DNA of 64,000 bases, taken from IMG/VR virus record IMGVR_UViG_3300018080_008436, positions 1 through 64,000 of that record; one strand, written 5' to 3'. A program made the translations under genes and the position numbers. The notes under the pieces were generated by a model. It saw only the letters and a list, made by a program, of their open reading frames with translations, was not told the origin of the DNA and made no database searches. Below, piece after piece: positions 32,296-61,012 of the stretch; the stretch's first letter is position 1; every line of letters begins with the position of its first letter.

Positions 32296-33147
32296 TCAGT
32301 TAGAAATCTCATTGTACTGACATTCAGTGCATGATATCTCATTCCCATGTGGGCAGGGTCCTCCCCAAGTACATCGATATTGAGGTGGTCCTACCCAAGT
32401 ACATCGATATTGAGGCTGACTAACGTTCGCAGTACTGGCATTAGTATTCGATTCATCTGAATGATCTGAATGATCTGAATGATCTGAATGTGAACGATTC
32501 AGTTCTTCTGAATGTGAACGATTCAGTGGATGATATACTCTTAGGTTATCTCCCCAATCATCTCCAGGTCTTATTGGTCTTATTCCTTCTTCATTTATAA
32601 CGTATACACCATTAGGATTATCTCCACTTCTTATTCTTCCTTCAATAATATTTTCCAACTGAGAGATAGAATTCTGAACATCAATTTGAAGATTATTTTC
32701 TTGTATCAGATCTCCATTTCTATTTGGATAAATATCGTTTGGTACTTCCTCTTGTGTTTCGGGGACATCATCTGAGAAAACTTCATTGTAATAATCGCAT
32801 GTATCGCAATCTAATTGCATGCAGTCTGAACATGGGTCACAATCATTATTGATTGTTGGGTCATAATCGGTATCTATAGTGTCGATATCTTGTCTATAGG
32901 ATCTACTGACTTGTGGATTATAGTTTGTTCCTCCCCCATTCAGACTCAATGAATACATACCAACGTTTAGTTCTATGTCTTCATGAAGCTTAGGAAGCGT
33001 TTTAATGGCCTTTACAGCCCTCAAAGCCTCATCATGGGTATCCCAGACCGAATCGGGCTTATTATTGATTGTGACAATGTATACGGCTTTATATTGCCCC
33101 ATAGGTTGACAATCTAATGTAAGTGTTCTTGTTCTTGTTTTCTTCAT
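32296..33147 (-). CDS. MIKPIILD-family paralog with long acidic/Cys tail
   Basis: TLTLDCQ..VYIV..DSVWDT..EA. Confidence 0.75.
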   Translation of the reverse strand: MKKTRTRTLTLDCQPMGQYKAVYIVTINNKPDSVWDTHDEALRAVKAIKTLPKLHEDIELNVGMYSLSLNGGGTNYNPQVSRSYRQDIDTIDTDYDPTINNDCDPCSDCMQLDCDTCDYYNEVFSDDVPETQEEVPNDIYPNRNGDLIQENNLQIDVQNSISQLENIIEGRIRSGDNPNGVYVINEEGIRPIRPGDDWGDNLRVYHPLNRSHSEELNRSHSDHSDHSDHSDESNTNASTANVSQPQYRCTWVGPPQYRCTWGGPCPHGNEISCTECQYNEISN

Positions 33148-33377
33148 AAGTTTTTTTGATGCTCAAATTGTGAGTACAATCTTCTTTGAATAATTTTGTA
33201 TGTGTATCCTTGAGGTTTCTTTTTAGCGTTTTCTATATATTCCTCTGCTTGTTCTTTTGTGGACCATATACATGCTATGACAGTTTCTGTTGTCAACATA
33301 TTACGAGTTCTAACCAGATATACGTATGGAGTGTCTTCTTCATATTGACAATCTAGTTTAATTGGTTTTATGCTCAT
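33144..33377 (-). CDS. MIKPIILD-family paralog
   Basis: IKPIKLDCQ..VYLV..IWSTKEQA. Confidence 0.8.
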   Translation of the reverse strand: MSIKPIKLDCQYEEDTPYVYLVRTRNMLTTETVIACIWSTKEQAEEYIENAKKKPQGYTYKIIQRRLYSQFEHQKNL

Positions 33378-33442
33378 TGGTTTTTATTAACCTAATTTAT
33401 TAACCTAATTTATTAACCCGTAGGGTTAATCCTCACTATTAT

Positions 33443-33655
33443 TTACCAATCGTCTTGCCAATTATCTTGCCAGTCTTTTTCTATCCATTGTGAGCATGCT
33501 CGACAATATTCTCCGTTATTTAATTGAACTCCTGGCCATACAGCGCCTTCAGATTCTGAATGTACTGTTGGAGTTTCTTTCTTACATTGTTCATCGACGC
33601 AGTAGACACATGTATTGCATCTTTTCTTACGCCATATGTGTTGATTTTTACCCAA
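33443..33655 (-). CDS. Cys-rich hypothetical protein
   Basis: CNTCVYC...C. Confidence 0.6.
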   Translation of the reverse strand: MGKNQHIWRKKRCNTCVYCVDEQCKKETPTVHSESEGAVWPGVQLNNGEYCRACSQWIEKDWQDNWQDDW

Positions 33656-33941
33656 TTATATATCCATCCTTATTTAGGTATTCTTTGATAGTGTGTGGGT
33701 CCATGCCCATATTTCTCATTTCTATGGCGGCTCTTAGTGCTTTTCTTTTTATTTCTATCAATGCCTCTGAGTATGTGACGATATAGTATCCTCTATGTGG
33801 GTATAGGAATCTACACATTTCTACGTAGTCTTTAGCTTCTTGTTCATTTGTCCAGACGCTTGATATAGCATCTTGTCCTGCTCCTTCGTGGCATTTGACG
33901 ATATATGTTTTTTGGCATTCTAGTGTAATAGTTTTAATCAT
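33648..33941 (-). CDS. MIKPIILD-family paralog
   Basis: MIKTITLE..YIV..SSVWTNEQEA. Confidence 0.8.
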   Translation of the reverse strand: MIKTITLECQKTYIVKCHEGAGQDAISSVWTNEQEAKDYVEMCRFLYPHRGYYIVTYSEALIEIKRKALRAAIEMRNMGMDPHTIKEYLNKDGYIIG

Positions 33942-33964
33942 TGATTATCTCATTCTTCGAATGG

Positions 33965-34435
33965 TTATCTCATTCTTCTATATACAACGCCTTCGTAAGT
34001 TATACAGTCGTCAGTTGGTCCTGTTGGTGTTGAACCAACTGGTTCAGTTGGTGTTGAACCAACAGGACTAGTTGGATCTGAAGAATATGGATGGTCTGCT
34101 GGAAGCACTAGGATATCATCTCTTGGTACAACTGTTTGTTCAGCCATATCTCTTTCATTAACTCTAATGAGTTCTTCTACAGCTTCAGCCACTCTTTGAC
34201 TATCCAATGGTACTTGTGTAACATAGTATCGTTCTGAATTATTGTATCGTTCTGAATTATTACGAGGGCTAAGTTGTTCTCTGATGTTGAGTGTCATAGC
34301 TTGTTTTGTTGCCATATGTCTTTCTGACCATACGCTTATAACTCTTACTCTTCCATCGCTTGTTTCTGCGAGGACGCTATAGGCGACTTCGTCTCTTTCA
34401 TTTGGCATTGTATCTAATATGATTGGTTTAATCAT
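33965..34435 (-). CDS. MIKPIILD-family paralog
   Basis: MIKPIILD..ISVWSE. Confidence 0.8.
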   Translation of the reverse strand: MIKPIILDTMPNERDEVAYSVLAETSDGRVRVISVWSERHMATKQAMTLNIREQLSPRNNSERYNNSERYYVTQVPLDSQRVAEAVEELIRVNERDMAEQTVVPRDDILVLPADHPYSSDPTSPVGSTPTEPVGSTPTGPTDDCITYEGVVYRRMR

Positions 34436-34668
34436 GACCTTTCTGGAGTTGGGCTATATGATTGTAATAATGAGATTCTTCTTTCTCGAATGTTCAATGT
34501 GTATCCACTAACCTGATGGAGAGTGTATAGGCTTTTAATTCTTTCGTATTCTCTGGAGGCTTCTTTTCGGTCATTATACACAGCATATGGACTTTCATTT
34601 ACCATAATGAGGTATACTTTTTGTGAGCTTCCTTTTTCTTGACAGTCTAGTGTTAAGGGTTTAATCAT
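34432..34668 (-). CDS. MIKPIILD-family paralog
   Basis: MIKPLTLDCQ..VYLI. Confidence 0.75.
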   Translation of the reverse strand: MIKPLTLDCQEKGSSQKVYLIMVNESPYAVYNDRKEASREYERIKSLYTLHQVSGYTLNIRERRISLLQSYSPTPERS

Positions 34669-34715
34669 ATGCCTGTTGCGTTATATGGACTTTCATTTAT
34701 TATAATGAGGTATAC

Positions 34716-35366: not shown

Positions 35367-35411
35367 AATTTTCCTCTTATTAACCTAATTTATTAACCCT
35401 ACGGGTTAATA

Positions 35412-35900
35412 TTATTCTCTTGAGCAATTAAAGCATGGACTTGGTGTTCCTTCATGGTCGAATGTAAGGTTTTTATATATGTTGGCATCTCCAGGAATAC
35501 CTGAGACTATTCCTTCTTGATGTGGGCATTCATTTTCTGTAGCGTATCTACATACAGTTAGTGAGTCGAAGCTTTGTATGTTTAACAGTCTTGATGCTTG
35601 TTTTCTTTCTTGTGCATCTACTTTTGCTTCTTCTGGCGACATTGTTCTTAGTTCTAATACCCTCATCCCTTGTGCTGTCATATTTTGTTCAGCGAGTTCT
35701 ATACCTTTGAGTATTAATTGTGGGTTAATAACTCTTTTTGTGTAATTTGGTCTGAAGTTTTCTGAGACATGGTTGATAGCTCTGATATGTCTTTGGGCAT
35801 CTTCTTCAGTATTCCAGACGACTTCGATACCGTTTCGATCTTTAACGATATAGACGTAGTTGCCATCTTCCTGGTTATCTAATGTGATATGTTTAATCAT
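35412..35900 (-). CDS. MIKPIILD-family paralog
   Basis: MIKHITLDNQ..VYIV..VVWNTEEDA. Confidence 0.8.
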   Translation of the reverse strand: MIKHITLDNQEDGNYVYIVKDRNGIEVVWNTEEDAQRHIRAINHVSENFRPNYTKRVINPQLILKGIELAEQNMTAQGMRVLELRTMSPEEAKVDAQERKQASRLLNIQSFDSLTVCRYATENECPHQEGIVSGIPGDANIYKNLTFDHEGTPSPCFNCSRE

Positions 35901-36121
35901 AGTTCTTCTGGGGTTACTCCCCCATATATAGGTTCGTTTGTTTTTAGTTTCATGTAGAAGCACTTTCCTGCTTGATCTTGTGTGAGTGTTGATCGTTCTT
36001 TTCGAACTTGAAGTATGGCATCTTCTCTTTCGCCCCATATTCCTAATATGATATCTTGATATTTGACAACATAAACAACTTTCTTATCTTCCTGACCATC
36101 TAATGTGATAGGTTTAATCAT
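35897..36121 (-). CDS. MIKPIILD-family paralog
   Basis: MIKPITLDGQ..GIWGEREDA. Confidence 0.8.
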   Translation of the reverse strand: MIKPITLDGQEDKKVVYVVKYQDIILGIWGEREDAILQVRKERSTLTQDQAGKCFYMKLKTNEPIYGGVTPEEL

Positions 36122-36420
36122 TATTGTGTCTCTTCTGAGGCTTCGTTCAGTCTTTGTATTCGTTCAATTCTTTCTCTTTTTTCTTGACTATTGATAGGTG
36201 TTGCTTTAACATGGTAGTATCTTTTTAGCATAGGGAATCTATACATAAGATATTCCAGGTGTTCTTCTGCGAGTTCTTCAGTATCCCATATTCCAATGAC
36301 CACATCGACCACATCATAAATGATTTCATCTTCTATTACATCCACTGTTACGACTCTATGCTGATATACTATGTATACCATTCTTTCTTCATGTTGCTGT
36401 AGGACGACAGGTTTAATCAT
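36121..36420 (-). CDS. MIKPIILD-family paralog
   Basis: MIKPVVLQQ..GIWDTEELA. Confidence 0.8.
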   Translation of the reverse strand: MIKPVVLQQHEERMVYIVYQHRVVTVDVIEDEIIYDVVDVVIGIWDTEELAEEHLEYLMYRFPMLKRYYHVKATPINSQEKRERIERIQRLNEASEETQ

Positions 36421-36637
36421 TGTTTTCCCATTCATGGATTTCTTTGATCCATGCTTCGTCATTGACCATCCTTTTGGAATACCAGTAATCGTCTGGTGGA
36501 TTTGAGTTAGTTTTTCTCAAATACTCTACGTGTTTTTTGGCTTTTTCTTCTTTATCCCATGCGCCGAGTATGAATGACCTTCTATGTACGATGAAGATAT
36601 TTCCTTCTTGGTGATCTAATAAGATTGTTTTAATCAT
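36413..36637 (-). CDS. MIKPIILD-family paralog
   Basis: MIKTILLDHQ..GAWDKEEKA. Confidence 0.8.
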   Translation of the reverse strand: MIKTILLDHQEGNIFIVHRRSFILGAWDKEEKAKKHVEYLRKTNSNPPDDYWYSKRMVNDEAWIKEIHEWENND

Positions 36638-36873
36638 TGGGTCTGTTTCAATGTGTTTTTAATCAATTTAGATATGAGTGTATTATCTAATGTTCTTCTT
36701 ACCACTTCCATTGGTATTTTTGATCCTGCGAGACTGCATGCTTTTACATAATCTTTTGCCTGTTCTTCATTAGACCACACTGTATCAATTTTCATTGTAT
36801 CCATATTCTGTACGAGATATATGTCTGAATCTCTTGTATTCAGTTGGTGATCAAATATGATTTTTCTAATCAT
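36634..36873 (-). CDS. MIKPIILD-family paralog
   Basis: MIRKIIFDHQ..TVWSNEEQA. Confidence 0.8.
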   Translation of the reverse strand: MIRKIIFDHQLNTRDSDIYLVQNMDTMKIDTVWSNEEQAKDYVKACSLAGSKIPMEVVRRTLDNTLISKLIKNTLKQTQ

Positions 36874-36880: not shown

Positions 36881-37294
36881 TTATACTTCTTCCATTATTC
36901 CGACAAATTCTTGTCGAATTTCTTCTTCAACTCTGATTCTTTCTCTAAGATGTCTATGTAGTGATCTTGATCTATCGTCCCTCTGTATCGCTGTAATAAT
37001 AGGTCTATCTATGCCGTATGCATCAGAGTTTGGATCTTGATGTTGCAATAATCTAATTGATCCATCGCTTCTTCTTTCGAGTGTTCCATTCTCGAATCTT
37101 TCTTGTATAACCCAATTACCATCTGAATGTCTTACAGAGATTTGGCGTCCTTCTTCATTGAAATCGAACAATGAATCACCAAGTTTTTCAGTATAATGGG
37201 TTGTTTCTTTGATAAACTTGAAACCCTTCCATTTTGAAAGGTCATCTGTTTCAGGTGCTTCAGGTGTTGTATCTAATATGATAGGTTTAATCAT
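36881..37294 (-). CDS. MIKPIILD leader fused to unrelated body
   Basis: MIKPIILDTTP, no SVW domain. Confidence 0.75.
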   Translation of the reverse strand: MIKPIILDTTPEAPETDDLSKWKGFKFIKETTHYTEKLGDSLFDFNEEGRQISVRHSDGNWVIQERFENGTLERRSDGSIRLLQHQDPNSDAYGIDRPIITAIQRDDRSRSLHRHLRERIRVEEEIRQEFVGIMEEV

Positions 37295-37634
37295 TTTGGT
37301 AAACCCTTATATTTTCTCGATATTGTTCGCAATTAATATGGCAGTATCTTGAGCCTGTTCTTTCGCAGTTGACACATGGTAGTTGTGATATATTATCTTC
37401 AGCTTGCAAACTTTCTTGAGCTTTTATTGCTATCAGCAACAAATTAGAATCAAGGGTAGTTCGAGTATACATTGCCTGTCTCTGGGGATTGAGTTTATTT
37501 ATTGCCGCAACATGTCTATCAGCATCTTCTCGTCTCATCCATACGCCATCTATGACTCTATGTTTTGTATGAACGACGTATACGCTGACATTCTTGCCTT
37601 CTGGCTGGTTATTTAATATGATTGTTTTAATCAT
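37287..37634 (-). CDS. MIKPIILD-family paralog, Cys tail
   Basis: MIKTIILNNQ..GVWMRREDA. Confidence 0.8.
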   Translation of the reverse strand: MIKTIILNNQPEGKNVSVYVVHTKHRVIDGVWMRREDADRHVAAINKLNPQRQAMYTRTTLDSNLLLIAIKAQESLQAEDNISQLPCVNCERTGSRYCHINCEQYRENIRVYQND

Positions 37635-38038
37635 CTTTCTTGACACCTTTCGCATTGGCAATCAGTATTCAGTTCTGGTGCTACTTTTTGGTCATTGTAT
37701 TGACATCTATAGCAATCAGTTGCTTCGAAGCAATCTTGAGGGTATTGACAACCATGTTTCTTTGAGTATTCGCAGATACCTCTAAGGTCTTTTTGATTGA
37801 GGATTTCTTGTGATTGATTTTTCAATGCCTGTTCATCGATTGATCTCATAACAGTATATAGTGTTATTCCTGGGACATCTATTTGGGATGATTTTACATA
37901 GAGTTCCGCATCTTCTTTTCTTGTCCAGACGGATAACATCTCATCAACTCTTTGACCGTTGTATCTTTGTGTTACTTTCATAACAATATAGATACATTCC
38001 AACCTTTCTTGTTGGTTGAGTATGAGTGTTTTAATCAT
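37631..38038 (-). CDS. MIKPIILD-family paralog, Cys tail
   Basis: MIKTLILNQQ..SVWTRKEDA. Confidence 0.8.
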   Translation of the reverse strand: MIKTLILNQQERLECIYIVMKVTQRYNGQRVDEMLSVWTRKEDAELYVKSSQIDVPGITLYTVMRSIDEQALKNQSQEILNQKDLRGICEYSKKHGCQYPQDCFEATDCYRCQYNDQKVAPELNTDCQCERCQER

Positions 38039-38214: not shown

Positions 38215-38306
38215 CTGTTACCTGGAATTAGTTTTCCGCATTTTGGACATATAAGTGACCAAGCTGGAATTTTCTTCTTACAATGTGGACATCTTTCTTT
38301 TTTCAT
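38211..38306 (-). CDS. 31-aa zinc-ribbon peptide (not in ORF track)
   Basis: CPHC...CPKCG; ATGA overlaps. Confidence 0.6.
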   Translation of the reverse strand: MKKERCPHCKKKIPAWSLICPKCGKLIPGNR

Positions 38307-38602
38307 TTATCCCATCCCATTAAGTATCTTGCTACTTTGTGTTCTACCTTTCTTTGTTCTTTCTCTGCGAGTTGTTGTGTTATGAGACCGTTGACATGTT
38401 CCCTCATATGTGGAGGATTCATAACTCTTTCGCAGTAATATACCTCTCGTCTTCCCTGCCATGTATATGCCTCTACTTGTTGTTTAGCATCATGTTTATT
38501 ATCCCATACCGAGATGATTTCATCACCTTGAAAGACGATGTAGACCATAACTCCATCACTTGACTGTCCATCTAAAGTAATTTGTTTGACATCTGTTTTC
38601 AC
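38303..38602 (-). CDS. MIKPIILD-family paralog
   Basis: VKQITLDGQ..ISVWDNKHDA. Confidence 0.8.
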   Translation of the reverse strand: MKTDVKQITLDGQSSDGVMVYIVFQGDEIISVWDNKHDAKQQVEAYTWQGRREVYYCERVMNPPHMREHVNGLITQQLAEKEQRKVEHKVARYLMGWDK

Positions 38603-39282
38603 ATGATACCTTCGTTGACAAACGGTTTAATGATATCTGCTTTTTTCAGTTCTTCCTCATGCTCATCGTGGCATTTATCTGAGCAGAACCAGAGCCAAAT
38701 TCTTTCTCTTGGACTTTCTTTTATATGTGTAAATGTACTAGCAGTCTTTCTGGAGTTTACATCTTTCATTTCTTTGCATTGGCATCGGTAGCATACAAGT
38801 TCGGGCAATTTGTCGAGTGTATCAAGTGTTTCTTGTCTATAGATCTCAGATATCCTTATCGCTTCATCGTATTCTTTTGCAACAGCTAGAATCTCATAGG
38901 GAACCCACTTTATATCTGGATCATGTCTTCCTCTAAACATCCATATTCCATCAATTATCCTTAAAATTGCTCTTGCGTATATATGATTAAACCATCCAGT
39001 ATGATTGTCATAAACATGGTCTTCTTCATCAATAACAGATCTTTCGACTTCGACTACATCACCAGTAGTTAAGTTCATCATCACTTCATATCCGACAATA
39101 ACTGGTCTGTTGTTGATTTTTTTCTTTACAATAACTGCATTTGGATATGAAATTTTTAATTTCTCCAACATTTCTTCAGCCACATGTATTTGAGACCATA
39201 CCGAATGTGGACATGTATATTCGGGGCCTTCCCATAGTTCGTAAACAACATTTTGGTTTTCTAATATAATTGGCTTAACCAT
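38599..39282 (-). CDS. MIKPIILD-family paralog with C-terminal FCS/TRASH-like Zn finger
   Basis: MVKPIILE..HSVW; CYRC..WFCSDKC. Confidence 0.8.
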   Translation of the reverse strand: MVKPIILENQNVVYELWEGPEYTCPHSVWSQIHVAEEMLEKLKISYPNAVIVKKKINNRPVIVGYEVMMNLTTGDVVEVERSVIDEEDHVYDNHTGWFNHIYARAILRIIDGIWMFRGRHDPDIKWVPYEILAVAKEYDEAIRISEIYRQETLDTLDKLPELVCYRCQCKEMKDVNSRKTASTFTHIKESPRERIWLWFCSDKCHDEHEEELKKADIIKPFVNEGIM

Positions 39283-39824
39283 CAGAATGGAATCTCTATG
39301 TTTATCCAATCATTATTGGACTCAGTTACTGTTTCATTAGTGTCTACGTAAGGTTCTTCCTCTTTCGATTCTTGAAACTCTTCAGGGTGAGTATATTTTC
39401 TTACCATATTTTTTCTTGCCATCAGATGACCATATTTGTAGCAGAACTCCGTCATTGAGATTTCCAAATCAACTGACAGGATGAGGTGACATCTTACATG
39501 ACTTCCGTTAGATAGTTTGTAATCAACATCTATCATAACATATTGATTGTCATCTGGGAACCTATTTGACACAGCTAAGTGTCTACAGGATTGAGGGATG
39601 ATCATGTATTCTACAGGGAACGATCCCTCTTGTAGATCTTGTTTTGTATAGAGGAATGACTCATTCATACACCATGGTCTTCCTATTTTTGGAAGGATGT
39701 AGTGTCTGAGTTGTTTGTCAAAACATCTGACAATCAGATCCAGGGAATCTTCATGAAACCCTAAGACCTTTTCCAAAGTATCAAAGTGTTTATCTTGAAA
39801 TGGTAATGTAACAGTGTTTTTCAT
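39282..39824 (-). CDS. hypothetical protein (divergent leader)
   Basis: ORF in array. Confidence 0.7.
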   Translation of the reverse strand: MKNTVTLPFQDKHFDTLEKVLGFHEDSLDLIVRCFDKQLRHYILPKIGRPWCMNESFLYTKQDLQEGSFPVEYMIIPQSCRHLAVSNRFPDDNQYVMIDVDYKLSNGSHVRCHLILSVDLEISMTEFCYKYGHLMARKNMVRKYTHPEEFQESKEEEPYVDTNETVTESNNDWINIEIPF

Positions 39825-40249
39825 TATCTTAGGTTCACATCGCAGGGGACGTATCTATCTTTAAAAACTCTCAATGTTAATCGGTTTTCTACTTTGAAGA
39901 TGAATGAAGTTGTTAGTCCCTGGTAATTTACTTCAAACAGGGAGTATCCTTCGACAGTCATCCCATTCTCTCTTCTTGCTCCAGTAGGCGTTTGGGTCAT
40001 TTCTTCCCTGATTTTATATTTTTGGGTTGAGACATATAAATAGTTAGAATCTACATATGCCACATATTCTCTTCCATGACACCAGATTTCATCTTCAAAA
40101 ATCTTTATTCTTGGCAATCCTGAACTTGGGATTCTGAACTTTGATATCACCAATTGTTGAAAGAACAAATAGTTTTCCAAGGCATCACCCAATTCGATTT
40201 GAGTTGGCCTTCTTTTTGGTGTACTGCTCAATATAATTGGCTTAATCAT
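39824..40249 (-). CDS. MIKPIILS leader fused to unrelated body
   Basis: MIKPIILSSTP. Confidence 0.75.
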   Translation of the reverse strand: MIKPIILSSTPKRRPTQIELGDALENYLFFQQLVISKFRIPSSGLPRIKIFEDEIWCHGREYVAYVDSNYLYVSTQKYKIREEMTQTPTGARRENGMTVEGYSLFEVNYQGLTTSFIFKVENRLTLRVFKDRYVPCDVNLR

Positions 40250-40641
40250 CCTTGAAGATTTACCAAGTTATATTTATCTTTATATTCTTCTGGATTCATC
40301 CGCTTGTTGATTGGACCAACAAAAGTTCTCAATGCTTGTTGATAATTAACTGATCCAAAAGACATGTCGCAGATGAAGTACCCATGTCTTTGCATCCTGT
40401 TTCTTTGATCTCTGATCCTGCCATAATACGATCCTGTTCTTGATCTTGCATCAGCCCAGTGAATTCCACTCCCATATATTGTCCAATCAGAAACAGGCAT
40501 CAACATACAATATTTGAATCTTCTTCCGAAGCATTCTTCTAATGCCATTGATGTTCTGTTGTGAACTTTCAGAGTTTTTTCAATCTGAGTGAAATCTGGT
40601 ATAAACTCATTCATACTTTCTAATGTGATTATTTTAATCAT
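40246..40641 (-). CDS. MIKIITLE leader fused to unrelated body
   Basis: MIKIITLES. Confidence 0.75.
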   Translation of the reverse strand: MIKIITLESMNEFIPDFTQIEKTLKVHNRTSMALEECFGRRFKYCMLMPVSDWTIYGSGIHWADARSRTGSYYGRIRDQRNRMQRHGYFICDMSFGSVNYQQALRTFVGPINKRMNPEEYKDKYNLVNLQG

Positions 40642-41533
40642 CGGATTCTTCTCTTTGGATTTCTTGCCATGTGAGATCTTCCATGACTGTTCTGAATGTT
40701 TCCATCATCTCCCTGTCCAATTCATATTTGATTTGATCAGAGCTAGACTGTTGATCGAAATTCATCAGATATGGGGAATAATCTACGTGGTTAATATTGA
40801 TATTCATTTTGCTAAATCTTTTAATGTCATTGTAGATCTTATCATATCTTGACTGATATTCTTGATCTTTTTTCTTTGATTTAGCTCGTCTCACTTTCTC
40901 TTGATATCGTCTAAAGCATTCATCAGAGCAGAACCAGACATATTGTTCTTTGTCGGGTGATTCAAGAGTATAAATATATGCCTCTGGTCTCTCATATTTC
41001 TTTATGTCTTTGTACTCATTGGCCTTACAGTTTTTACACTCAAGTTCTGGAAGGTTTTCCAGTTCTTCGATCTGAGCAGGGATTAAAGCTCTAGCTTCTT
41101 CTATAGCTCTGTCAGCATCGACATGGATGTAGGATATCATACAATCAATCCATCCTTTTGAAAAAGCACTGGCATTAGCTCTACATTTCCAATCTCCATC
41201 TTTTTTATAGTAATTGGCTTTGGGGAAGTTTGAAGGGATGTTTAAAGCCGCTCTGTATGACATCTCCACTGTTTCCAGTTCTGGATCATAAACAATTGCT
41301 CTGGTTTCCTCAACTTCTCCAGAAAGTTTCACCCAAACTTTGTAGGCAATAACAACAGGATTGTTATTCGCTTCTTCTTCGAGGATATAAGCATCTGGTT
41401 TAGCTATAAGAAGTCTTTCCAGGTTCTCTTCTGCCAAATTTTTACTTGTCCAGATTGAGTGAATTACTCTTCCTCCTGATGAAAGAAGCTTATAGATTTT
41501 ATTATGTTCATCAAGTGTGATTGTTTTGATCAT
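40634..41533 (-). CDS. MIKPIILD-family paralog with FCS-like Zn finger
   Basis: MIKTITLDE..IHSIWTS; CKNC..WFCSDEC. Confidence 0.8.
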   Translation of the reverse strand: MIKTITLDEHNKIYKLLSSGGRVIHSIWTSKNLAEENLERLLIAKPDAYILEEEANNNPVVIAYKVWVKLSGEVEETRAIVYDPELETVEMSYRAALNIPSNFPKANYYKKDGDWKCRANASAFSKGWIDCMISYIHVDADRAIEEARALIPAQIEELENLPELECKNCKANEYKDIKKYERPEAYIYTLESPDKEQYVWFCSDECFRRYQEKVRRAKSKKKDQEYQSRYDKIYNDIKRFSKMNININHVDYSPYLMNFDQQSSSDQIKYELDREMMETFRTVMEDLTWQEIQREESDD

Positions 41534-41546: not shown

Positions 41547-42353
41547 TTAGTAATCGTCTGAGTCATCCCATCTCAATGATTCTGGGAGGTCTTCATATTC
41601 TTCATCTGAGGTTGATGCTGATTCTTCTGATGAGGACTCTTCTTCTGATTCTTCTGAAGATGATGAGGTGCCATATTCATAATTTCCTGAAGAGGTCATA
41701 TTACGGAAAGTTTGATTATTTTCCGCAAATTCAGCATGACATTCGTCTGAACAGAACCAAATGAATCTACCTCCGACAAAATTCCCCATAGTGTTTTGGC
41801 TATCCCAGTCCTTAACTTCTTTTGATCCACAGTTTCTACATGGGATATCATTAACAATTGATGGCAATACTTCTAACAGTTCTTGCCTAAAGCTCTCTAA
41901 TTTTGCAAGAGTGATTTCTCTATCCAGGTCAATTGCTTGCATGACTATTGGTCTTATGAACAACGATCCTGCGTAGATGTATCTAAACATCCACTCTTCA
42001 TTCATATATCTAACTCTTACTGGAGAGAACGTGTCATCAATATGGATTTCTTCTGTTTCAATCTTTGGTGTATTGACCCTATCTTCTCCCATTACAGTCA
42101 TCCAAACACGTTCGTCATTAAGAATATTCCCTTTAAGGTCCATTCTGATTTTACTAACCAATTTTGTATCGAAGTCTGGATTAATCTTAATTTCTTCAAT
42201 ATATGTCTCACCATACTTAGGAGTAATCAATTCAACAACTTTCTGCGCTCTTTCTTTTGAGGTCCATCTTGAGTGGATTGCTCCACCTCTTTGATGAGTC
42301 CAAACATTGTACAGTGTGTTTTGCTGTTCTAAAATGATTGGTTTAATAGTCAT
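41547..42353 (-). CDS. MIKPIILD-family paralog with FCS-like Zn finger and acidic tail
   Basis: IKPIILEQQ..IHSRWTS; CRNC..WFCSDEC. Confidence 0.8.
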   Translation of the reverse strand: MTIKPIILEQQNTLYNVWTHQRGGAIHSRWTSKERAQKVVELITPKYGETYIEEIKINPDFDTKLVSKIRMDLKGNILNDERVWMTVMGEDRVNTPKIETEEIHIDDTFSPVRVRYMNEEWMFRYIYAGSLFIRPIVMQAIDLDREITLAKLESFRQELLEVLPSIVNDIPCRNCGSKEVKDWDSQNTMGNFVGGRFIWFCSDECHAEFAENNQTFRNMTSSGNYEYGTSSSSEESEEESSSEESASTSDEEYEDLPESLRWDDSDDY

Positions 42354-43044: not shown

Positions 43045-43353
43045 TTATTCTCTATAATCGTCATAAATTTCTAATGTGGGGAATCCACCTACTGTTTGTG
43101 GAGGGGAGATAACAATGTTCCCCCATTCATCGATAAAATCCATTAGTTCTTTCAAAGAACCGAACTCTTTAATATCACCTTCGCAAAGTTTATGAAAATT
43201 ATCTTGGGAACCAACACTCCCTAATTTAGTTTCCTCAAAATTGAATCCAAGCTTTTCCATTTCTTTGGCTTCATCTTCAGTATAGTATGAACCCGCAGAG
43301 TTTATATGGAAGGTGTAAGAGGACTCTTCTAAAATGAGATTTACTACTTGCAT
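43045..43353 (-). CDS. hypothetical phage protein
   Basis: LEIYDDYRE C-terminus. Confidence 0.7.
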   Translation of the reverse strand: MQVVNLILEESSYTFHINSAGSYYTEDEAKEMEKLGFNFEETKLGSVGSQDNFHKLCEGDIKEFGSLKELMDFIDEWGNIVISPPQTVGGFPTLEIYDDYRE

Positions 43354-52948: not shown

Positions 52949-53407
52949 CTAGATAATTTGTAGTGCATGTAAAACCCAATACAATGTTGCCCCTATAATA
53001 GTGATATCTAATATTAACGCTACAGGCAACCATTTTTGTATCTTTCTCATCCTTTCAAGTCGAAAAGCTTCCTCATGCTTTTCCGCAAACTGACATTCTC
53101 TTATCGACTCTTCTCCTTCAGTCAACTCAAAATCTATAAAAGGAATTAGAGATCCAATAGGTGCTTCATGTATCCTAGCCTTCGGATATGTAGAAATGAT
53201 GTTATCCAAAATATATTCAGCCTCTTCTCTCGTCTTCCAAATGGAATGGATCTCTAAATGAGGTGGATAATCCGTACATGATGTTCTATCAAATGGATAG
53301 CTCTTATGGACTCTGAATTCTGGGGGAGGAAGATATACACTCCTGACAATAACATAAACATTGGGGGTGACTATCTGATCTTCTAATACAATTTGTTTAA
53401 CGTTCAT
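52949..53407 (-). CDS. MIKPIILD-family paralog with C-terminal TM
   Basis: VKQIVLEDQ..IHSIWKTREEA. Confidence 0.8.
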   Translation of the reverse strand: MNVKQIVLEDQIVTPNVYVIVRSVYLPPPEFRVHKSYPFDRTSCTDYPPHLEIHSIWKTREEAEYILDNIISTYPKARIHEAPIGSLIPFIDFELTEGEESIRECQFAEKHEEAFRLERMRKIQKWLPVALILDITIIGATLYWVLHALQII

Positions 53408-53691
53408 GACCTTGTCGCTCTAGTAGTTATTTCAGCCATAACTTCTTGGATCTGATCCCTGACGCTCAAATGGGTACATAAATGGGGAGTCGGATTTACA
53501 TCTAACTCAACGGTAACGACACTACCTTCTGTCAGTTCTGAACCACTAGTAAGTTGGTTGACTATTCTTGAGGCATGCTCTCTTCTTGTCCATATAGAAT
53601 GAACAGCGCCCTCCCAAATAACAACACAAACTTGCAACGGGACTTTTACTTTATCAGGTGTACTATCAAGAATTATCTTCTTCGTTGACAT
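53404..53691 (-). CDS. MIKPIILD-family paralog
   Basis: TKKIILDSTP..VHSIWTRREHA. Confidence 0.8.
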   Translation of the reverse strand: MSTKKIILDSTPDKVKVPLQVCVVIWEGAVHSIWTRREHASRIVNQLTSGSELTEGSVVTVELDVNPTPHLCTHLSVRDQIQEVMAEITTRATRS

Positions 53692-54031
53692 CGTTTCTCT
53701 CATGTTGATAATGATTTGGCATGTCATAATCCCATACAGAAGAATCAAAGTTATCTTCAGGGATTGTCCTGGCAGAGTTTAAAGCAACACCGTTATGGAC
53801 TACAACAGATCTTCTTTCATTTTCTCGAATATTGATTGCAATCTTTTTTATAAACACTAAGTTGAATTGATGCCCATGCCTTGTCTCATGATCAATTAGT
53901 GCTTTGACTTCGCAGGCAGTGTCTTCACTTGTCCAGATAGAATCAACAACATTGTTGTGTATAACAACATAAACATATTCTCGCTCTTCTATCGGAGTTC
54001 TATCCAGTACAATTGTTGCTGATTCCGACAT
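53666..54031 (-). CDS. MIKPIILD-family paralog
   Basis: ATIVLDRTP..VDSIWTSEDTA. Confidence 0.8.
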   Translation of the reverse strand: MSESATIVLDRTPIEEREYVYVVIHNNVVDSIWTSEDTACEVKALIDHETRHGHQFNLVFIKKIAINIRENERRSVVVHNGVALNSARTIPEDNFDSSVWDYDMPNHYQHERNDVNEEDNS

Positions 54032-54345
54032 TAAAAACCCTCATTGAAACCACTATCTGAAAACACATCCATCAAAGTTCTTCCCCTTCCTCTGCCATAC
54101 CGTCTTTCATCTTGTTCTCTTGCTCTTCTAACAACATGATCAGTTCCAGGGCAATTTGTGTTTTCATTAAGGTATACTCTTTGGAGTATCCCACTCCCGT
54201 TTTCTTCAACAATCTGACCAAAGACTTCCTGAGCCTCAAATGGGTCTGTCCAGGCAGAATGCACCACATTACCGACTACGATAAGGTGAAGTAAGATCCC
54301 GCTTTCTACAGTATCTTCCAGATTAAATATGCGAACTTTAGCCAT
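54031..54345 (-). CDS. MIKPIILD-family paralog
   Basis: VRIFNLED..VHSAWTDPFEA. Confidence 0.75.
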   Translation of the reverse strand: MAKVRIFNLEDTVESGILLHLIVVGNVVHSAWTDPFEAQEVFGQIVEENGSGILQRVYLNENTNCPGTDHVVRRAREQDERRYGRGRGRTLMDVFSDSGFNEGF

Positions 54346-55866: not shown

Positions 55867-55867
55867 T

Positions 55868-57687: not shown

Positions 57688-57688
57688 A

Positions 57689-58153: not shown

Positions 58154-58175
58154 TGTTCTAACCCATCGATAAATT

Positions 58176-58694: not shown

Positions 58695-58695
58695 G

Positions 58696-58920: not shown

Positions 58921-58963
58921 TTCCTACATTCCTTATTGGCCAAATTCAAACTCTTCATCATCT

Positions 58964-59338
58964 TCAACACTCTTCTTCTAGATCTTCATGTTCATACAGT
59001 TCTGGATTTAGATCAGTGTCTTTGATGATCTTTTCGCAAGCATCCTTGACTATATACTCAAGAGTTTGAATTCTATCTGATACACAGTTCATCTTTCTTT
59101 CAAGAAGTTCTTGAGCCTTTTCTCTAATCAATCGATTTCGATCTGCATGGAACTTCCGTATCAATTCAGAGAATTTAACCTCATGCCCATTAATCTTTAG
59201 TTCGATCTCATAGACACCATCTTTAGATTCACTTACTAATTGTTTAAATTCTTCTCTTGAAAGAGTTGTAGTGAGAGTAACCAAAGCCCAATGCTCTGGT
59301 GTATCTCTTTTTTCTGCCCTGAAATTGAACAGTTCCAT
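58964..59338 (-). CDS. hypothetical protein
   Basis: SD GGAG. Confidence 0.7.
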   Translation of the reverse strand: MELFNFRAEKRDTPEHWALVTLTTTLSREEFKQLVSESKDGVYEIELKINGHEVKFSELIRKFHADRNRLIREKAQELLERKMNCVSDRIQTLEYIVKDACEKIIKDTDLNPELYEHEDLEEEC

Positions 59339-59436
59339 TATTCAAACTCCGCTTTGAGTTTCTCGTATTCCAGACGGCGTTACGATAACCGTTTAAATTA
59401 AACATTACGATGAATATAACATGTTTACTGGCAATG

Positions 59437-59655
59437 TCAAGTCTTCTTGCCCCATTTTATCCAGTTGATTACATTGAAGGTAAAATAGGTTATTTGAAGG
59501 AGCAATAGTCCCCATAGTTGATTGGTAATCGCCACATATGTTAATAGAAAATTCGATATGGAGAAAAGCACAAAACAGGAACGATTCTTCTCTCCTATCA
59601 AATATATGGCGGGAAGTGTTATAAGGAAGGCTGATATATCAACCCAGTTAATCAT
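59437..59655 (-). CDS. PnuC-like small 3-TM protein
   Basis: Three TMs, LLQ..Y......W..W pattern. Confidence 0.6.
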   Translation of the reverse strand: MINWVDISAFLITLPAIYLIGEKNRSCFVLFSISNFLLTYVAITNQLWGLLLLQITYFTFNVINWIKWGKKT

Positions 59656-59858
59656 TGGTCATCCATCTTCTGAAGGATGATCGAGAAGTAGCCTTCGTCT
59701 GACACCACTTTTTGATAACTATTGCCACTTGATACAGATACGTTTTTCCAGACAGCAACATGAGTATCTGGGACTGGATACCATCCATCCTTAAGATGTG
59801 TATTGACTTCATTTTGAAATTTCCATGGTTCCTCTTCGTAAATCATTTTGAACTGCAT
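59652..59858 (-). CDS. DUF1737-like protein
   Basis: FQNEVN.HLKDGW.P. Confidence 0.55.
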   Translation of the reverse strand: MQFKMIYEEEPWKFQNEVNTHLKDGWYPVPDTHVAVWKNVSVSSGNSYQKVVSDEGYFSIILQKMDDQ

Positions 59859-59870
59859 TGTGTTTCTCCA

Positions 59871-60464
59871 TTAAATGTTGTTAATACGATCTAAGTTATC
59901 CTCAAGGATCTGAATCATTTCATCTTTGTATTCTCTTGCCCTCCTGAGCGCTTCTTCTTTTGTTGGTCCTAAGGCTCCAATAAGGCATTCTTTGGTCATG
60001 TCTCTCCAATCGGGATACTCAAAAAATGTTGACCAGTTATCGTCTGTATGTTGAACAACCCACTTATTGTCTATCTTCCTGGGAAGCTCTCCATCTACAA
60101 TGAGTGCCTCTGGAATACCAATTCTTGAGAAGTAGGCTTCTGGAGTTATGAAGTTATATGGATAGGCGGGAGGATCTGTTCTAAGATAAACGCAACGATA
60201 GTCCATGCTAATCAAATCATCGGCAACTTGTTCGCCATTATTTAAGTTAACTAAGACTTCATATCCTGCAACTTCAGGCATCTTTCTGTCCAACTCAATG
60301 TTAAGAAAGAAAGCGTTTGAATGTTGGTCATTAGTCAAGATATCCACCATTCTTTGAGCGTCTTCTTCGGTTGACCATAATGAATGAGCATAATCATTCT
60401 GGGTGCTACCCTCAAAAACTAAATAGTATACATGTTGACTTTCGAGTATGATCGTATTGTTCAT
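59871..60464 (-). CDS. MIKPIILD-family paralog
   Basis: NTIILESQ.VYYLV..AHSLWSTEEDA. Confidence 0.8.
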   Translation of the reverse strand: MNNTIILESQHVYYLVFEGSTQNDYAHSLWSTEEDAQRMVDILTNDQHSNAFFLNIELDRKMPEVAGYEVLVNLNNGEQVADDLISMDYRCVYLRTDPPAYPYNFITPEAYFSRIGIPEALIVDGELPRKIDNKWVVQHTDDNWSTFFEYPDWRDMTKECLIGALGPTKEEALRRAREYKDEMIQILEDNLDRINNI

Positions 60465-61012
60465 CTCATCCAGTGTTGTCTTCTATTCCTTGGATCAAGT
60501 CTATTATACCATGGTTCTTGAGAGTTTGCTCTTTCTCTGCGTCTAAATTCTCGGTTAAATTCAGGATGAACTCCTTCTGACATCTCACTGATGATGTATC
60601 TTGGAGTTGAGTCTGTTGGTTTCTTACAAGAGGTCACTCTTCGCTCTTGATGTCTTTCTTGATCTCTTCGTAATCGATCTTGATCCTCCCGCTCCAAGGC
60701 TCTTCCTTCTGCACGAGCTTCTCTTCTAATCTCTGCCATTTTGGTCATATGGTTATAGACCACTTTTAAATTAACACAACGATCATAAGAGAATGAGATC
60801 AGACGATCATCAACTAATTCTTCATCAAGGATTACCTCTTCACCATAAAGATCTACGATCCCTTTGTACCATCCGTTCAACCAGTTGGAAGCTGTTTGCC
60901 CAGTTTTTTCATCAATGATAACAGTCACAACTCCCATATATGAGTAAGGACCTTCTGTCATCCTTCCCATAGTGCAAACTTCAGGCTTTATGTCTAAGAT
61001 CGCAACATTCAT
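60461..61012 (-). CDS. hypothetical protein
   Basis: ATGA overlaps. Confidence 0.7.
   Translation of the reverse strand: MNVAILDIKPEVCTMGRMTEGPYSYMGVVTVIIDEKTGQTASNWLNGWYKGIVDLYGEEVILDEELVDDRLISFSYDRCVNLKVVYNHMTKMAEIRREARAEGRALEREDQDRLRRDQERHQERRVTSCKKPTDSTPRYIISEMSEGVHPEFNREFRRRERANSQEPWYNRLDPRNRRQHWMR

What the first reader, a model, noticed from the sequence alone, without database searches (positions are those of the whole stretch)
32296..61012. Expansion of about 33 genes sharing an N-terminal MIKPIILD leader
Seen: leader (M)x-K-(P/T)-I-(I/T)-L-(D/E), usually followed by a ~45-aa YIV...I(H/D)S(I/V)W-x4-5-A module and then unrelated tails (Cys clusters, Zn fingers, TM helices, acidic tracts). 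Clusters lie at 32.3-45.0 and 51.6-55.2 kb with an outlier at 59.9 kb. The leader is also fused to bodies lacking the module (36881, 39824, 40246), so it behaves as a portable tag. Known analogy: T4 internal proteins use a short N-terminal capsid-targeting sequence. Inference: a docking, targeting or degron tag on a diversified effector/adaptor library.
Basis: partly seen in the sequence, partly recalled or inferred. Interest (0 to 1): 0.85.

Follow-up and report, generated by a model that had tools for sequence, protein, structure and literature searches.

The report
Tagged small-protein gene array in huge phage
A 476-kb uncultured phage carries about 31 tandem genes for small proteins that all begin with the same eight-residue peptide; the peptide is a lineage-specific add-on to a widespread but uncharacterised phage mini-domain (DUF7336-like), and what it does is still unknown.

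Summary
On the minus strand between 32.3 and 60.5 kb, 31 genes start with x-K-(P/T)-I-(I/T)-L-(D/E). In 28 of them a ~55-aa beta-beta-alpha-beta module follows, and three have unrelated ORFan bodies.

The module is a remote relative of Pfam DUF7336, a 50-60 aa domain common in phages and of unknown function. That domain begins after the leader. Leaderless homologs exist in this genome and elsewhere. AlphaFold leaves the leader unstructured in two models, and its key residues are as conserved as the core residues.

Portability is local only, because the leader occurs nowhere else in the 476-kb genome. Part of its conservation acts on the nucleotides: ATGATTAAA is a start codon that also carries stops in both other frames, and it chains the genes by overlap.

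The T4 capsid-targeting analogy has no support. No function was shown. My best inference is a shared docking peptide on a fast-evolving early-protein library. The soluble FtsH-like protease embedded in the array is a speculative partner.

The parts
32296..33147 (-). Member, 283 aa: leader (TRTLTLD) + module + long Cys-rich, repeat-bearing tail
   Evidence: HMM E 1.8e-14; 10 Cys and 3 CxxC in tail; in-frame tandem repeats at 32357-32415 and 32455-32490
33144..33377 (-). Member, 77 aa: leader + module only
   Evidence: HMM E 2.6e-19; best window hit to Pfam DUF7336, 21.2 bits
33648..33941 (-). Member, 97 aa; first sequence of A1 and the protein modelled
   Evidence: HMM E 9e-20; AF2 pLDDT 80.6, leader residues 1-9 coil, core E10-19 E23-30 H33-46 E52-60
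33965..34435 (-). Member, 156 aa: leader MIKPIILDTMP + module + repeat-bearing tail
   Evidence: HMM E 6e-17; in-frame repeats at 34016-34075 and 34226-34261
34432..34668 (-). Member, 78 aa
   Evidence: HMM E 1.7e-16
35412..35900 (-). Member, 162 aa, Cys-containing tail
   Evidence: HMM E 1.2e-20; same start as database protein P0002
35897..36121 (-). Member, 74 aa
   Evidence: HMM E 2e-17
36121..36420 (-). Member, 99 aa, with a long insert between the first two core strands
   Evidence: HMM E 2e-17; alignment A1
36413..36637 (-). Member, 74 aa
   Evidence: HMM E 5e-18
36634..36873 (-). Member, 79 aa (leader MIRKIIFD)
   Evidence: HMM E 3e-18
36881..37294 (-). Leader-only gene, 137 aa (MIKPIILDTTPE + unrelated ORFan body)
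   Evidence: HMM matches positions 1-12 only; only a self hit among 5.8e9 proteins; no module remnant in other frames
37287..37634 (-). Member, 115 aa, CxxC tail; has an external ortholog P0013
   Evidence: HMM E 5.5e-21; P0013 identity: leader 5/8, core 37/57, tail 16/55
37631..38038 (-). Member, 135 aa, tail with 8 Cys
   Evidence: HMM E 4e-19
38303..38602 (-). Member, 99 aa (GTG start)
   Evidence: HMM E 2.7e-19; same start as P0003
38599..39282 (-). Long-subfamily member, 227 aa: leader + module + beta domain + helix + CxxC...FCSxxC motif
   Evidence: HMM E 2.4e-17; alignments A2 and A3
39824..40249 (-). Leader-only gene, 141 aa (MIKPIILSSTPK + ORFan body)
   Evidence: HMM positions 1-13 only; only a self hit
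40246..40641 (-). Leader-only gene, 131 aa (MIKIITLES + ORFan body)
   Evidence: HMM positions 1-12 only; only a self hit, and the database gene call starts 9 residues later; weak similarity to 39282-39824 (E 0.005)
40634..41533 (-). Long-subfamily member, 299 aa, acidic C-terminus
   Evidence: HMM E 3e-15; A2
41547..42353 (-). Long-subfamily member, 268 aa; modelled at full length
   Evidence: HMM E 8e-18; AF2 pLDDT 73.8, leader residues 1-8 coil at pLDDT ~55
42350..43042 (-). Divergent long-subfamily member, 230 aa (degenerate leader MNVKSIMVG)
   Evidence: Aligns over its full length with the long subfamily, including the C-terminal Cys motif; N-terminal HMM score is marginal
43972..44295 (-). 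Member, 107 aa
   Evidence: HMM E 2.8e-19
44576..45031 (-). Member, 151 aa, divergent module, C-terminal TM anchor
   Evidence: HMM E 2.9e-4; hydropathy 2.61 at residue 128
45334..47364 (-). Context, not a member: soluble FtsH-like AAA+ / M41 metalloprotease lying between the two clusters
   Evidence: Peptidase_M41 1.2e-14, ClpB_D2-small and AAA hits; Walker A GMTGVGKT and HEAGH read from the translation; no relatives in phage collections
51574..51915 (-). Member, 113 aa (TTG start)
   Evidence: HMM E 4e-15; same start as P0015
51902..52123 (-). Member, 73 aa
   Evidence: HMM E 6e-17; same start as P0019
52123..52578 (-). Member, 151 aa, C-terminal TM anchor
   Evidence: HMM E 2e-16; hydropathy 3.14 at residue 130
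52949..53407 (-). Member, 152 aa, large insert in the core, C-terminal TM anchor
   Evidence: HMM E 7.5e-16; hydropathy 1.9 at residue 127
53404..53691 (-). Member, 95 aa (leader TKKIILDSTP)
   Evidence: HMM E 3e-16; same start as P0012
53666..54031 (-). Member, 121 aa (leader ATIVLDRTP)
   Evidence: HMM E 1.7e-11
54031..54345 (-). Divergent member, 104 aa (leader VRIFNLED)
   Evidence: 21.8 bits with the enlarged family HMM; same start as P0037
54393..55202 (-). Long-subfamily member, 269 aa; external orthologs P0039 and P0048
   Evidence: HMM E 2.8e-16
59871..60464 (-). Long-subfamily member without the Cys motif, 197 aa; conserved orthologs in relatives
   Evidence: HMM E 1e-10; 38-40% identical to L021:1568-2140 and L024:1075-1647
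39282..39824 (-). Doubtful: leader-like MKNTVTLPFQ, no module
   Evidence: Not supported by the HMM; weak similarity to 40246-40641
43045..43353 (-). Doubtful: leader-like and module-like by eye only
   Evidence: 0.5 bits
60461..61012 (-).
   Evidence: 1.2 bits; no Pfam hit

Best explanation
The region is a lineage-specific, locally duplicated array of at least 31 small genes in a 476-kb uncultured phage.

Each protein has three parts:
(i) an 8-11 residue N-terminal peptide, x-K-(P/T)-I-(I/T)-L-(D/E), followed by x-Q or S-T-P;
(ii) in 28 of 31, a DUF7336-like beta-beta-alpha-beta mini-domain;
(iii) a hypervariable C-terminal tail (Zn-ribbon-like Cys clusters, membrane anchors, acidic or repeat tracts, or nothing).

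The peptide is an add-on peculiar to this phage clade. It is not a strand of the ancestral fold.

Inferred mechanism: the peptide is a flexible short linear motif that, alone or together with the mini-domain, docks every family member onto one common partner, probably by adding a beta-strand to it. The tails then supply different targets or locations. The result would be an adaptor or effector library for host take-over.

At the DNA level, the first three codons, ATGATTAAA, are both a start codon and a stop in each of the other two frames. This lets neighbouring genes be chained by 1-, 4- or 8-nt overlaps and translated by coupling.

Shown: the anatomy, the separability of leader and module, remote homology of the core to DUF7336, local duplication, fast-evolving tails, and the start/stop joint.
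Inferred: docking, the existence of a common partner, and any role in host take-over.

The confidence of 0.4 is for the docking mechanism. The descriptive part I hold at about 0.85.
For: Family and layout.

The leader is as conserved as the core. K3 has 3.9 bits, I5 3.6 and L7 3.85, against Y17 3.6, W32 3.9 and A38 4.3. The same holds in 28 external homologs, which read M(K/N)TKPIILDSTP.

Selection acts on the peptide. Pro, Ile, Leu and Asp codons vary synonymously, and the relatives keep K-P-I-I-L-D behind different first codons.

The leader lies outside the fold. AF2 shows residues 1-9 as coil in the module model (pLDDT 80.6 overall) and residues 1-8 as coil at pLDDT ~55 in a full-length long member.

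The core is DUF7336-like. Leaderless homologs pass the Pfam cut-off (P0071 at 38.4 bits, P0067 at 25.3; cut-off 25). hhalign gives 98.3% over columns 17-63 only. Foldseek against BFVD finds 50-60 aa phage proteins, several annotated DUF7336, at TM 0.7-0.8 and probability 1.0.

Separable both ways. There are leader-only ORFan genes and leaderless modules.

Gradient of constraint in ortholog pairs: leader 52%, core 37%, tail 22% identity.

Array dynamics. Similarity falls with genomic distance (rho -0.30, p 3e-9). The tails carry in-frame tandem repeats, and tail types are diverse.

Coupling. Of 31 junctions in 32.3-45.3 kb, 12 overlap by 4 nt, 4 by 8 nt and 3 by 1 nt. Eleven of the genome's 18 minus-strand ATGATTAAA sites sit at member starts. 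Ile-2 is ATT in 14 of 17 cases against 33% usage (p 4e-5).

Promoter-like sites are at background level, which is consistent with long polycistronic units.
Against: No partner was identified and no interaction was tested.

AF2 was run on monomers with shallow alignments (27 paralogs, 12 sequences), so an unstructured leader may only mean that its partner strand, possibly a second copy of the same protein, was absent.

Twenty-eight of 31 carriers share one domain, and the three exceptions are ORFans inside the array. The leader could therefore be retained there by descent rather than by function.

The leader occurs on no gene elsewhere in the genome.

Extra codon bias inside the leader (Ile-6 ATA, Leu-7 xTA, also in relatives) shows that some constraint acts on the nucleotides.

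There are no expression data; only DNA metagenomes hold the sequence.
Confidence: 0.4

Rival explanations
1. The leader is structural. In this clade's version of the mini-domain it forms an extra edge strand, or a swapped strand that holds homo- or hetero-oligomers of family members together. The leader-only genes are decayed or rewritten descendants that kept their 5' end.
For: The residues alternate as in a beta-strand (K3, I5 and L7 on one face; P/T4, I/T6 and D8 on the other), and both faces are conserved. In some members the linker to the first core strand is only 3 residues, which is compatible with a hairpin. The leader is found only with this family's array. The DUF7336-like fold has an exposed three-stranded sheet.
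Against: AF2 does not pair it in either model. The ancestral domain folds without it, as shown by 50-60 aa DUF7336 proteins. Linker length varies from 3 to about 25 residues and often contains Pro. Three intact genes of 131-141 aa keep the leader with no module to pair with.
Confidence: 0.25
2. The leader is an N-terminal degron or timer. All family members are recognised through it by an AAA+ protease, either the phage's own soluble FtsH-like enzyme at 45334-47364 or host ClpXP/ClpAP, so that a whole class of early proteins is cleared together. In the reverse version they act as adaptors that deliver bound host proteins to that protease.
For: The FtsH-like gene lies between the two clusters of the array, on the same strand, with intact Walker A/B and HEAGH motifs and no membrane anchor. 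The phage also encodes a ClpB-like protein. The leader is predicted flexible and N-terminal. From general knowledge, ClpX recognises short N-terminal motifs of the type Met-basic-hydrophobic.
Against: The evidence is purely positional. Co-occurrence could not be tested, because no second complete genome of the clade exists in the collections. The relatives' fragments with members show no protease.
Confidence: 0.12
3. Capsid targeting, as in T4 internal proteins. The leader takes the proteins into the prohead and is cut off by the prohead protease, so that a diverse set of proteins is injected with the DNA.
For: The format is the same: a roughly 10-residue conserved N-terminal peptide ending in an acidic residue, on diversified small proteins in a plastic locus. 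T4 internal proteins share only the capsid targeting sequence (PMC3012670). A 476-kb phage has a very large head.
Against: The acidic residue is Asp in 15 of 26 window members and Glu in 5, whereas T4 cleavage follows Glu (general knowledge). No S77 (T4 gp21) or S78 prohead protease was detected, although the S77 control was uninformative. Three members have C-terminal membrane anchors, which does not fit a packaged soluble protein. The array sits among nucleotide-metabolism and early-type genes rather than head genes.
Confidence: 0.08
4. The conservation acts mainly on the nucleic acid. The 5' end of each gene would be a translation-initiation and coupling element, or an operator for a translational regulator, copied with each duplication or homogenised by gene conversion. 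The peptide would be a by-product.
For: ATGATTAAA carries stops in both other frames and is used as the junction. ATT at codon 2 is in strong excess (p 4e-5). Ile-6 is ATA in 9 of 13 cases and Leu-7 is xTA in 19 of 25 (p 1.6e-6), and xTA recurs in relatives in 11 of 13. This places a TAG or TAA in the same frame as the upstream gene's TGA. Mean nucleotide identity is 49% in the first 30 nt against 28% for the next 60 nt compared position by position without alignment. The phage encodes its own IF-1.
Against: Pro, Ile-5, Leu (TTA/CTA) and Asp (GAT here, GAC in relatives) codons vary while the residues stay the same. Relatives have different first codons (ATG AAA ACT AAA ...) but the same K-P-I-I-L-D. 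Nothing upstream of the ATG is conserved. The longest shared exact stretch is only 16 nt, which argues against recent gene conversion.
Confidence: 0.1

Closest known systems
Pfam DUF7336 (PF24024): 50-60 aa proteins of many tailed phages and some bacteria, function unknown
   Same: The same beta-beta-alpha-beta core with the V-Y-V-V ... S-V-W-x3-E-x-A signature. Leaderless relatives of the window family pass the Pfam cut-off. Structural superposition gives TM 0.7-0.8.
   Different: Window members score below the cut-off (best 21.2 bits against 25). They carry an N-terminal leader that DUF7336 lacks. They have variable C-terminal tails of up to 234 residues and are amplified to about 28 copies in one genome.
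Capsid targeting sequence of T4-type internal proteins
   Same: A short conserved N-terminal peptide shared by diversified small proteins in a plastic locus (PMC3012670).
   Different: Here 28 of 31 carriers also share a folded domain. The leader ends mainly in Asp. No T4-type prohead protease was found. Some members are membrane-anchored. There is no evidence of packaging or cleavage.
Lineage-specific expansion of about 35 Zn-ribbon proteins in Bacillus phage G
   Same: A comparable copy number of one small-protein family in a roughly 0.5-Mb phage. Several window members also end in Zn-ribbon-like Cys clusters (PMC7824862).
   Different: The conserved part is different (leader plus DUF7336-like domain rather than the Zn ribbon). 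The Cys clusters here are only one of several tail types.
Translational coupling through overlapping stop and start codons (ATGA, TAATG) in phage and bacterial operons
   Same: Nineteen of 31 junctions overlap by 1, 4 or 8 nt.
   Different: The recurrent 9-mer ATGATTAAA supplies stops for both alternative frames at once. It is also the first three codons of a conserved peptide.
Adaptor-family expansions of eukaryotic viruses (poxvirus ankyrin/PRANC and BTB-kelch proteins); comparison from general knowledge
   Same: A small constant module is combined with variable target-binding parts and amplified within one viral genome.
   Different: There is no sequence or fold relationship. A shared partner has not been shown here.

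Membership tests
Pfam DUF7336 (PF24024) | Score at or above the curated gathering cut-off (25 bits) | tested here: not met
   Three of 27 window members hit, best E 1.7e-4. The six-frame search of the genome gives 21.2 bits at best.
Pfam DUF7336 (PF24024) | Homology traceable through intermediate sequences or profiles | tested here: met
   Leaderless proteins found by the family profile pass the cut-off (P0071 38.4 bits, P0067 25.3). hhalign of the family against the leaderless set gives 98.3%, E 1.9e-14. The leaderless set was itself found with the family profile, so the hhalign value is not independent.
Pfam DUF7336 (PF24024) | Same fold as annotated members | tested here: met
   Foldseek against BFVD finds DUF7336-annotated proteins of phages Spock, 2725-N35, phiAGATE, Jersey and Coruscant at TMt 0.61-0.79 and probability 1.0. 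Both sides are predicted models.
T4-type capsid targeting sequence | Conserved N-terminal peptide on otherwise unrelated proteins | tested here: inconclusive
   There are four body types, but 28 of 31 carriers share one domain, and the three other bodies are ORFans inside the array.
T4-type capsid targeting sequence | The peptide ends in a prohead-protease site (Leu/Ile-x-Glu in T4; general knowledge) | tested here: not met
   Position 8 is Asp in 15, Glu in 5 and another residue in 6 of 26 window members. In external members it is Asp in 20 and Glu in 5.
T4-type capsid targeting sequence | A T4-type prohead protease (Peptidase_S77) in the genome | tested here: inconclusive
   No match, but the control search also found nothing anywhere. 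S78 is also absent. A divergent protease cannot be excluded.
T4-type capsid targeting sequence | Proteins present in the virion with processed N-termini | not testable with these tools
   The phage is uncultured and no proteome is available.
N-terminal degron of AAA+ proteases | Leader-dependent recognition or degradation by a AAA+ protease | not testable with these tools
   The only evidence is that the FtsH-like gene lies within the array.
Signal peptide or lipoprotein signal | A hydrophobic core of at least 10-15 residues before a cleavage site or lipobox | tested here: not met
   The leader has only 3-4 hydrophobic residues followed by Asp/Glu. The only hydropathy peaks of TM strength (mean of 1.9 or more over 19 residues) are C-terminal, in three members.

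The most novel reading that the evidence does not exclude
The leader is a dedicated recognition tag for the phage's own soluble FtsH-like AAA+ protease, which is encoded in the middle of the array. The ~31 proteins would then form a phage-built adaptor or degron system. Their variable tails would capture different host proteins, or sit in the membrane, and the common tag would hand them to one proteolytic machine. This would be a prokaryotic-virus counterpart of the F-box and BTB adaptor expansions of eukaryotic viruses.
Probability: 0.1. Interest if true: 0.85.

Novelty: new variant of a known kind. Interest (0 to 1): 0.55.

Why it matters
Huge phages carry hundreds of small genes of unknown function, and DUF7336-type mini-proteins are common across tailed phages without any assigned role. 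Here one such domain has been amplified about 28-fold, given a constant N-terminal peptide that is at least as conserved as its fold, and joined to many different tails.

This natural design (constant handle, variable end) points to a shared partner. It gives a direct experimental route to the function of the leader and of DUF7336 itself: leader-reporter fusions, pull-downs with several paralogs, and the adjacent protease as a first candidate.

The ATGATTAAA start/stop joint is also a compact example of how a gene array can be built so that duplicated or rearranged cassettes stay translationally coupled.

Tried and rejected
- **Family libraries.** Pfam and PHROGs scans of members and leader-only proteins gave no family above threshold.
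- **Solved structures.** The profile search against PDB sequences gave nothing (best E 0.08). Foldseek against the PDB gave nothing for the module (best E 1.6) or for the long member (TM 0.15 or less).
- **Multi-repeat hits.** Four hits of the profile search looked like tandem modules in large proteins (P0001, P0027, P0031, P0043). They are low-complexity, FN3-like, propeller and SPOR-like repeats, and I rejected them as spurious.
- **SPOR relationship.** This appeared only as a weak structural and sequence echo and I did not pursue it.
- **Relatives.** INPHARED phages gave no DNA or protein match. IMG/VR and GTDB genomes gave no relatives of the protease or of the conserved long member. The two family alignments were too variable for pattern scans. 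A back-translated KPIILDSTP pattern found nothing in IMG/VR. In JGI metagenomes it found only the source contig plus chance matches. The records behind L021 and L024 are not held.
- **Frameshifted modules.** None were found in the leader-only genes.
- **Stop-codon recoding.** The standard code fits.
- **Strain variation.** The other two runs hold the identical strain at low depth.
- **Signal peptide or lipobox reading.** Rejected, because there is no hydrophobic core.
- **Literature.** Searches for DUF7336 and for the source contig name returned no papers.

Full report
**Setting.** The window is the first 64 kb of a single 476,248-bp contig with 39% G+C. The tools describe it as an IMG/VR virus record that CheckV rates 98% complete. 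The same sequence lies on a 524,692-bp JGI metagenome contig, Ga0180433_10000003, and in three sediment or seawater runs. The genome encodes a DnaE-type polymerase, a ClpB-like ATPase, a protein with a Cas12f-like TNB domain and an intein-bearing protein. It is therefore a huge tailed phage. The standard genetic code fits.

**Observation.** ORF listing shows a long run of tightly packed minus-strand genes whose products begin MIKPIILD, MIKTITLE and similar. A loose leader regex gives 24 minus-strand matches in 32.3-55.2 kb, all at N-termini. Genome-wide, 24 of the 49 six-frame matches lie in this 1% of the search space.

An HMM of the first ~70 residues finds 26 ORFs at E<1e-3, all between 32296 and 60464, and nothing significant elsewhere apart from a leaderless module-like ORF at 116229-116408. 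Two divergent genes join on further evidence: 54031-54345 at 21.8 bits and 42350-43042 through the long-subfamily alignment. Three genes (36881-37294, 39824-40249, 40246-40641) match only the first 12-13 profile positions, so they carry the leader alone. The supported total is 31. Three more (39282-39824, 43045-43353, 60461-61012) look similar by eye but fail the test. The one correction is that the module extends through a fourth conserved element, to about 55-60 residues.

**What the module is.** Neither Pfam nor PHROGs assigns the members to a family at normal thresholds. A profile search of 1.84 billion representative proteins returned only 76 hits:
- 23 are the phage's own proteins.
- Four multi-repeat hits are spurious.
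- 28 of the remaining external hits carry the leader, mostly as M(K/N)TKPIILDSTP, and come from a few metagenomes.
- About a dozen are small leaderless proteins that start directly at the V-Y-V-V strand, and five more have two tandem modules without a leader.

The leaderless group links the family to Pfam DUF7336. P0071 scores 38.4 bits and P0067 25.3 against a cut-off of 25, and several others fall just below it. Window members themselves stay below the cut-off, at 21.2 bits at best.

AlphaFold2 on the 27-paralog alignment gives a confident model (pLDDT 80.6) with strands at 10-19 and 23-30, a helix at 33-46 and a strand at 52-60. This model has no significant PDB neighbour. It superposes on many 50-60 aa phage proteins in BFVD at TM 0.7-0.8, rmsd 1-2 Å and probability 1.0, and several of those are annotated DUF7336. 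The core is therefore a remote DUF7336-like domain. No paper in the searchable library mentions DUF7336, and its function is unknown.

**What the leader is.** Four lines of evidence show that it is not part of that fold:
- The DUF7336 profile and the leaderless homologs begin after it. hhalign aligns only family columns 17-63.
- The structural neighbours are too short to contain it.
- AlphaFold2 leaves residues 1-9 without secondary structure in the module model. It leaves residues 1-8 as coil at pLDDT ~55 in a full-length 268-aa member whose core is confident.
- The linker between the leader and the first core strand varies from 3 to about 25 residues and often contains Pro.

The leader is nevertheless under strong constraint. 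K3, I5 and L7 carry 3.6-3.9 bits, as much as the core's Y, W and A. The same is true in the external homologs. In clear ortholog pairs, identity falls from 52% in the leader to 37% in the core and 22% in the tail.

The constraint acts on the peptide. Codons for Pro, Ile-5, Leu and Asp vary synonymously, and relatives keep K-P-I-I-L-D behind different opening codons.

Leader and module are separable in both directions. Leaderless modules exist in this genome and in relatives. Three intact 131-141 aa genes carry the leader on bodies with no homolog among 5.8 billion proteins and no frameshifted module remnant. Open frames of that length are unlikely by chance in 37% G+C DNA, so these are probably real genes (inference).

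**Limits on 'portable'.** A leader-only HMM finds the motif on no other gene of the 476-kb genome beyond two weak candidates of about 7 bits. All three leader-only genes lie inside the array. The simplest evolutionary reading is in-situ birth from family members, or recombination at the conserved 5' end, rather than a tag used throughout the genome.

**A nucleotide-level layer.** Eleven member genes start with the 9-mer ATGATTAAA. The genome has only 18 copies on that strand and 3 on the other. The 9-mer contains TGA in one alternative frame and TAA in the other.

Among the 31 junctions between 32.3 and 45.3 kb, the upstream stop overlaps the start by 4 nt in 12 cases, by 8 nt in 4 and by 1 nt in 3. 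Ile-2 is ATT in 14 of 17 cases against 33% usage (p 4e-5), as the TAA requires. The M-I-K part of the leader in this genome is thus partly a start/stop joint for translational coupling.

Further bias is unexplained. Ile-6 is ATA in 9 of 13 cases. Leu-7 is xTA in 19 of 25 cases (p 1.6e-6) and in 11 of 13 in relatives. With the following G or A this creates a TAG or TAA in the frame of the upstream gene's TGA, six codons downstream, which may act as a backup stop.

Promoter-like sites are at background level.

**Family dynamics.**
- Similarity of the N-terminal 70 residues declines with genomic distance (rho -0.30, p 3e-9), which indicates local duplication.
- Tails range from 8 to 234 residues. 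Nine contain CxxC-type Cys clusters, three end in a membrane anchor and several are acidic. Several carry in-frame tandem duplications.
- Six to seven long members share a beta-rich middle domain, a long helix and, in five of them, a CxxC...FCSxxC motif.
- This long form and a few others have orthologs in relatives, including the 59.9-kb 'outlier' at 38-40% identity. Most external members have no one-to-one partner, so repertoires turn over quickly.
- Relatives also show tandem members: three in 1.2 kb of L022 and two in L009.

**Mechanism.** Nothing here demonstrates a function. My preferred inference is that the leader is a flexible short linear motif that docks all members to a common partner, while the tails diversify. 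Its position, flexibility, two conserved faces and retention on foreign bodies fit this.

The rivals are:
- a structural or oligomerisation strand;
- an N-terminal degron or adaptor tag for an AAA+ protease. The soluble FtsH-like gene at 45334-47364 lies between the two clusters and has intact motifs, but that is positional evidence only;
- T4-like capsid targeting, for which the tested features fail or are inconclusive;
- a purely nucleic-acid element, which codon variation and the relatives contradict for residues 4-8.

**Comparison and novelty.** The core belongs with DUF7336 as a remote relative rather than a member by the curated threshold. Large single-family expansions in huge phages have a precedent in the roughly 35 Zn-ribbon proteins of Bacillus phage G (PMC7824862). 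Conserved N-terminal tags on diversified proteins have a precedent in T4 internal proteins (PMC3012670).

What is new is the combination: a clade-specific, highly conserved N-terminal peptide grafted onto an amplified DUF7336-like domain, with variable tails, in a coupled gene chain. I rate it a new variant of a known kind. It is moderately interesting now and would be much more so if a common partner is found.

Noticed in passing
window 45334-47364 (-): A soluble FtsH-like protein with an AAA+ domain, a ClpB D2-small domain and an M41 peptidase domain. The Walker A and HEAGH motifs are intact and there is no N-terminal membrane segment. It has no relatives in INPHARED (tblastn) or IMG/VR.
   Followed up: partly
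window 62552-62767 (-): Phage-encoded translation initiation factor IF-1 (Pfam eIF-1a, 98 bits). It lies a few kb from a gene array that depends heavily on translational coupling.
   Followed up: partly
window 33941, 34435, 34668, 35900, 36121, 36420, 36637, 37294, 37634, 38038, 40641 (gene starts, - strand): The recurrent 9-mer ATGATTAAA is a start codon plus TGA and TAA in the two other frames. It is used as a 4- or 8-nt overlap junction. Eleven of the genome's 18 same-strand copies are at these starts.
   Followed up: yes
leader codons 6-8 of members, e.g. window 34412-34420; also L022, L009, L023: There is a strong bias to Leu codons TTA/CTA (19 of 25 here, 11 of 13 in relatives) followed by G or A. 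This creates an off-frame TAG or TAA in the frame of the upstream gene's TGA. It may be a backup stop, but the cause is unexplained.
   Followed up: partly
window 32357-32415, 32455-32490, 34016-34075, 34226-34261, 35179-35233: In-frame tandem duplications (periods 30, 9, 24, 18 and 21 nt) inside C-terminal tails of family members and of a neighbouring gene. They suggest rapid tail evolution by slippage.
   Followed up: partly
window 33383-33418: A perfect 13-nt direct repeat (2.8 copies, TTTATTAACCTAA on the + strand) in one of the few intergenic gaps of the array, just upstream of the gene starting at 33377.
   Followed up: no
window 48251-49000 (-): A 249-aa protein that appears, by eye, to be built of repeats of roughly 30 residues with a recurring W..IS....LSEEFI.EF motif. 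It has no Pfam match.
   Followed up: no
window 50223-50594 (-); 57037-58694 (-); 61941-63958 (-): Pyrimidine-dimer DNA glycosylase, an HNH endonuclease, two adjacent NUDIX hydrolases, an NT5C-type 5'-nucleotidase and an inosine-uridine nucleoside hydrolase flank the array. The NUDIX-HNH neighbourhood is syntenic in relatives L021 and L024.
   Followed up: partly
genome G000:C1 116229-116408 (-): A leaderless DUF7336-like 59-aa ORF far from the array (18.9 bits with the family HMM).
   Followed up: partly
genome G000:C1 125866-129225 (-), 456524-460027 (-), 184467-187397 (-), 321619-323931 (-): A 1118-aa protein with a Cas12f-like TNB domain, an intein (LAGLIDADG) within a 1166-aa protein, the DnaE Pol III alpha subunit and a ClpB-like double AAA+ protein elsewhere in the phage genome.
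   Followed up: no
genome G000:C1 171730-171990 (-) and 114028-114264 (-): Two weak leader-like N-termini outside the array (MIKHLELDAQ and TKIVTLDSH), at about 7 bits with the leader-only HMM. They may be chance matches.
   Followed up: no
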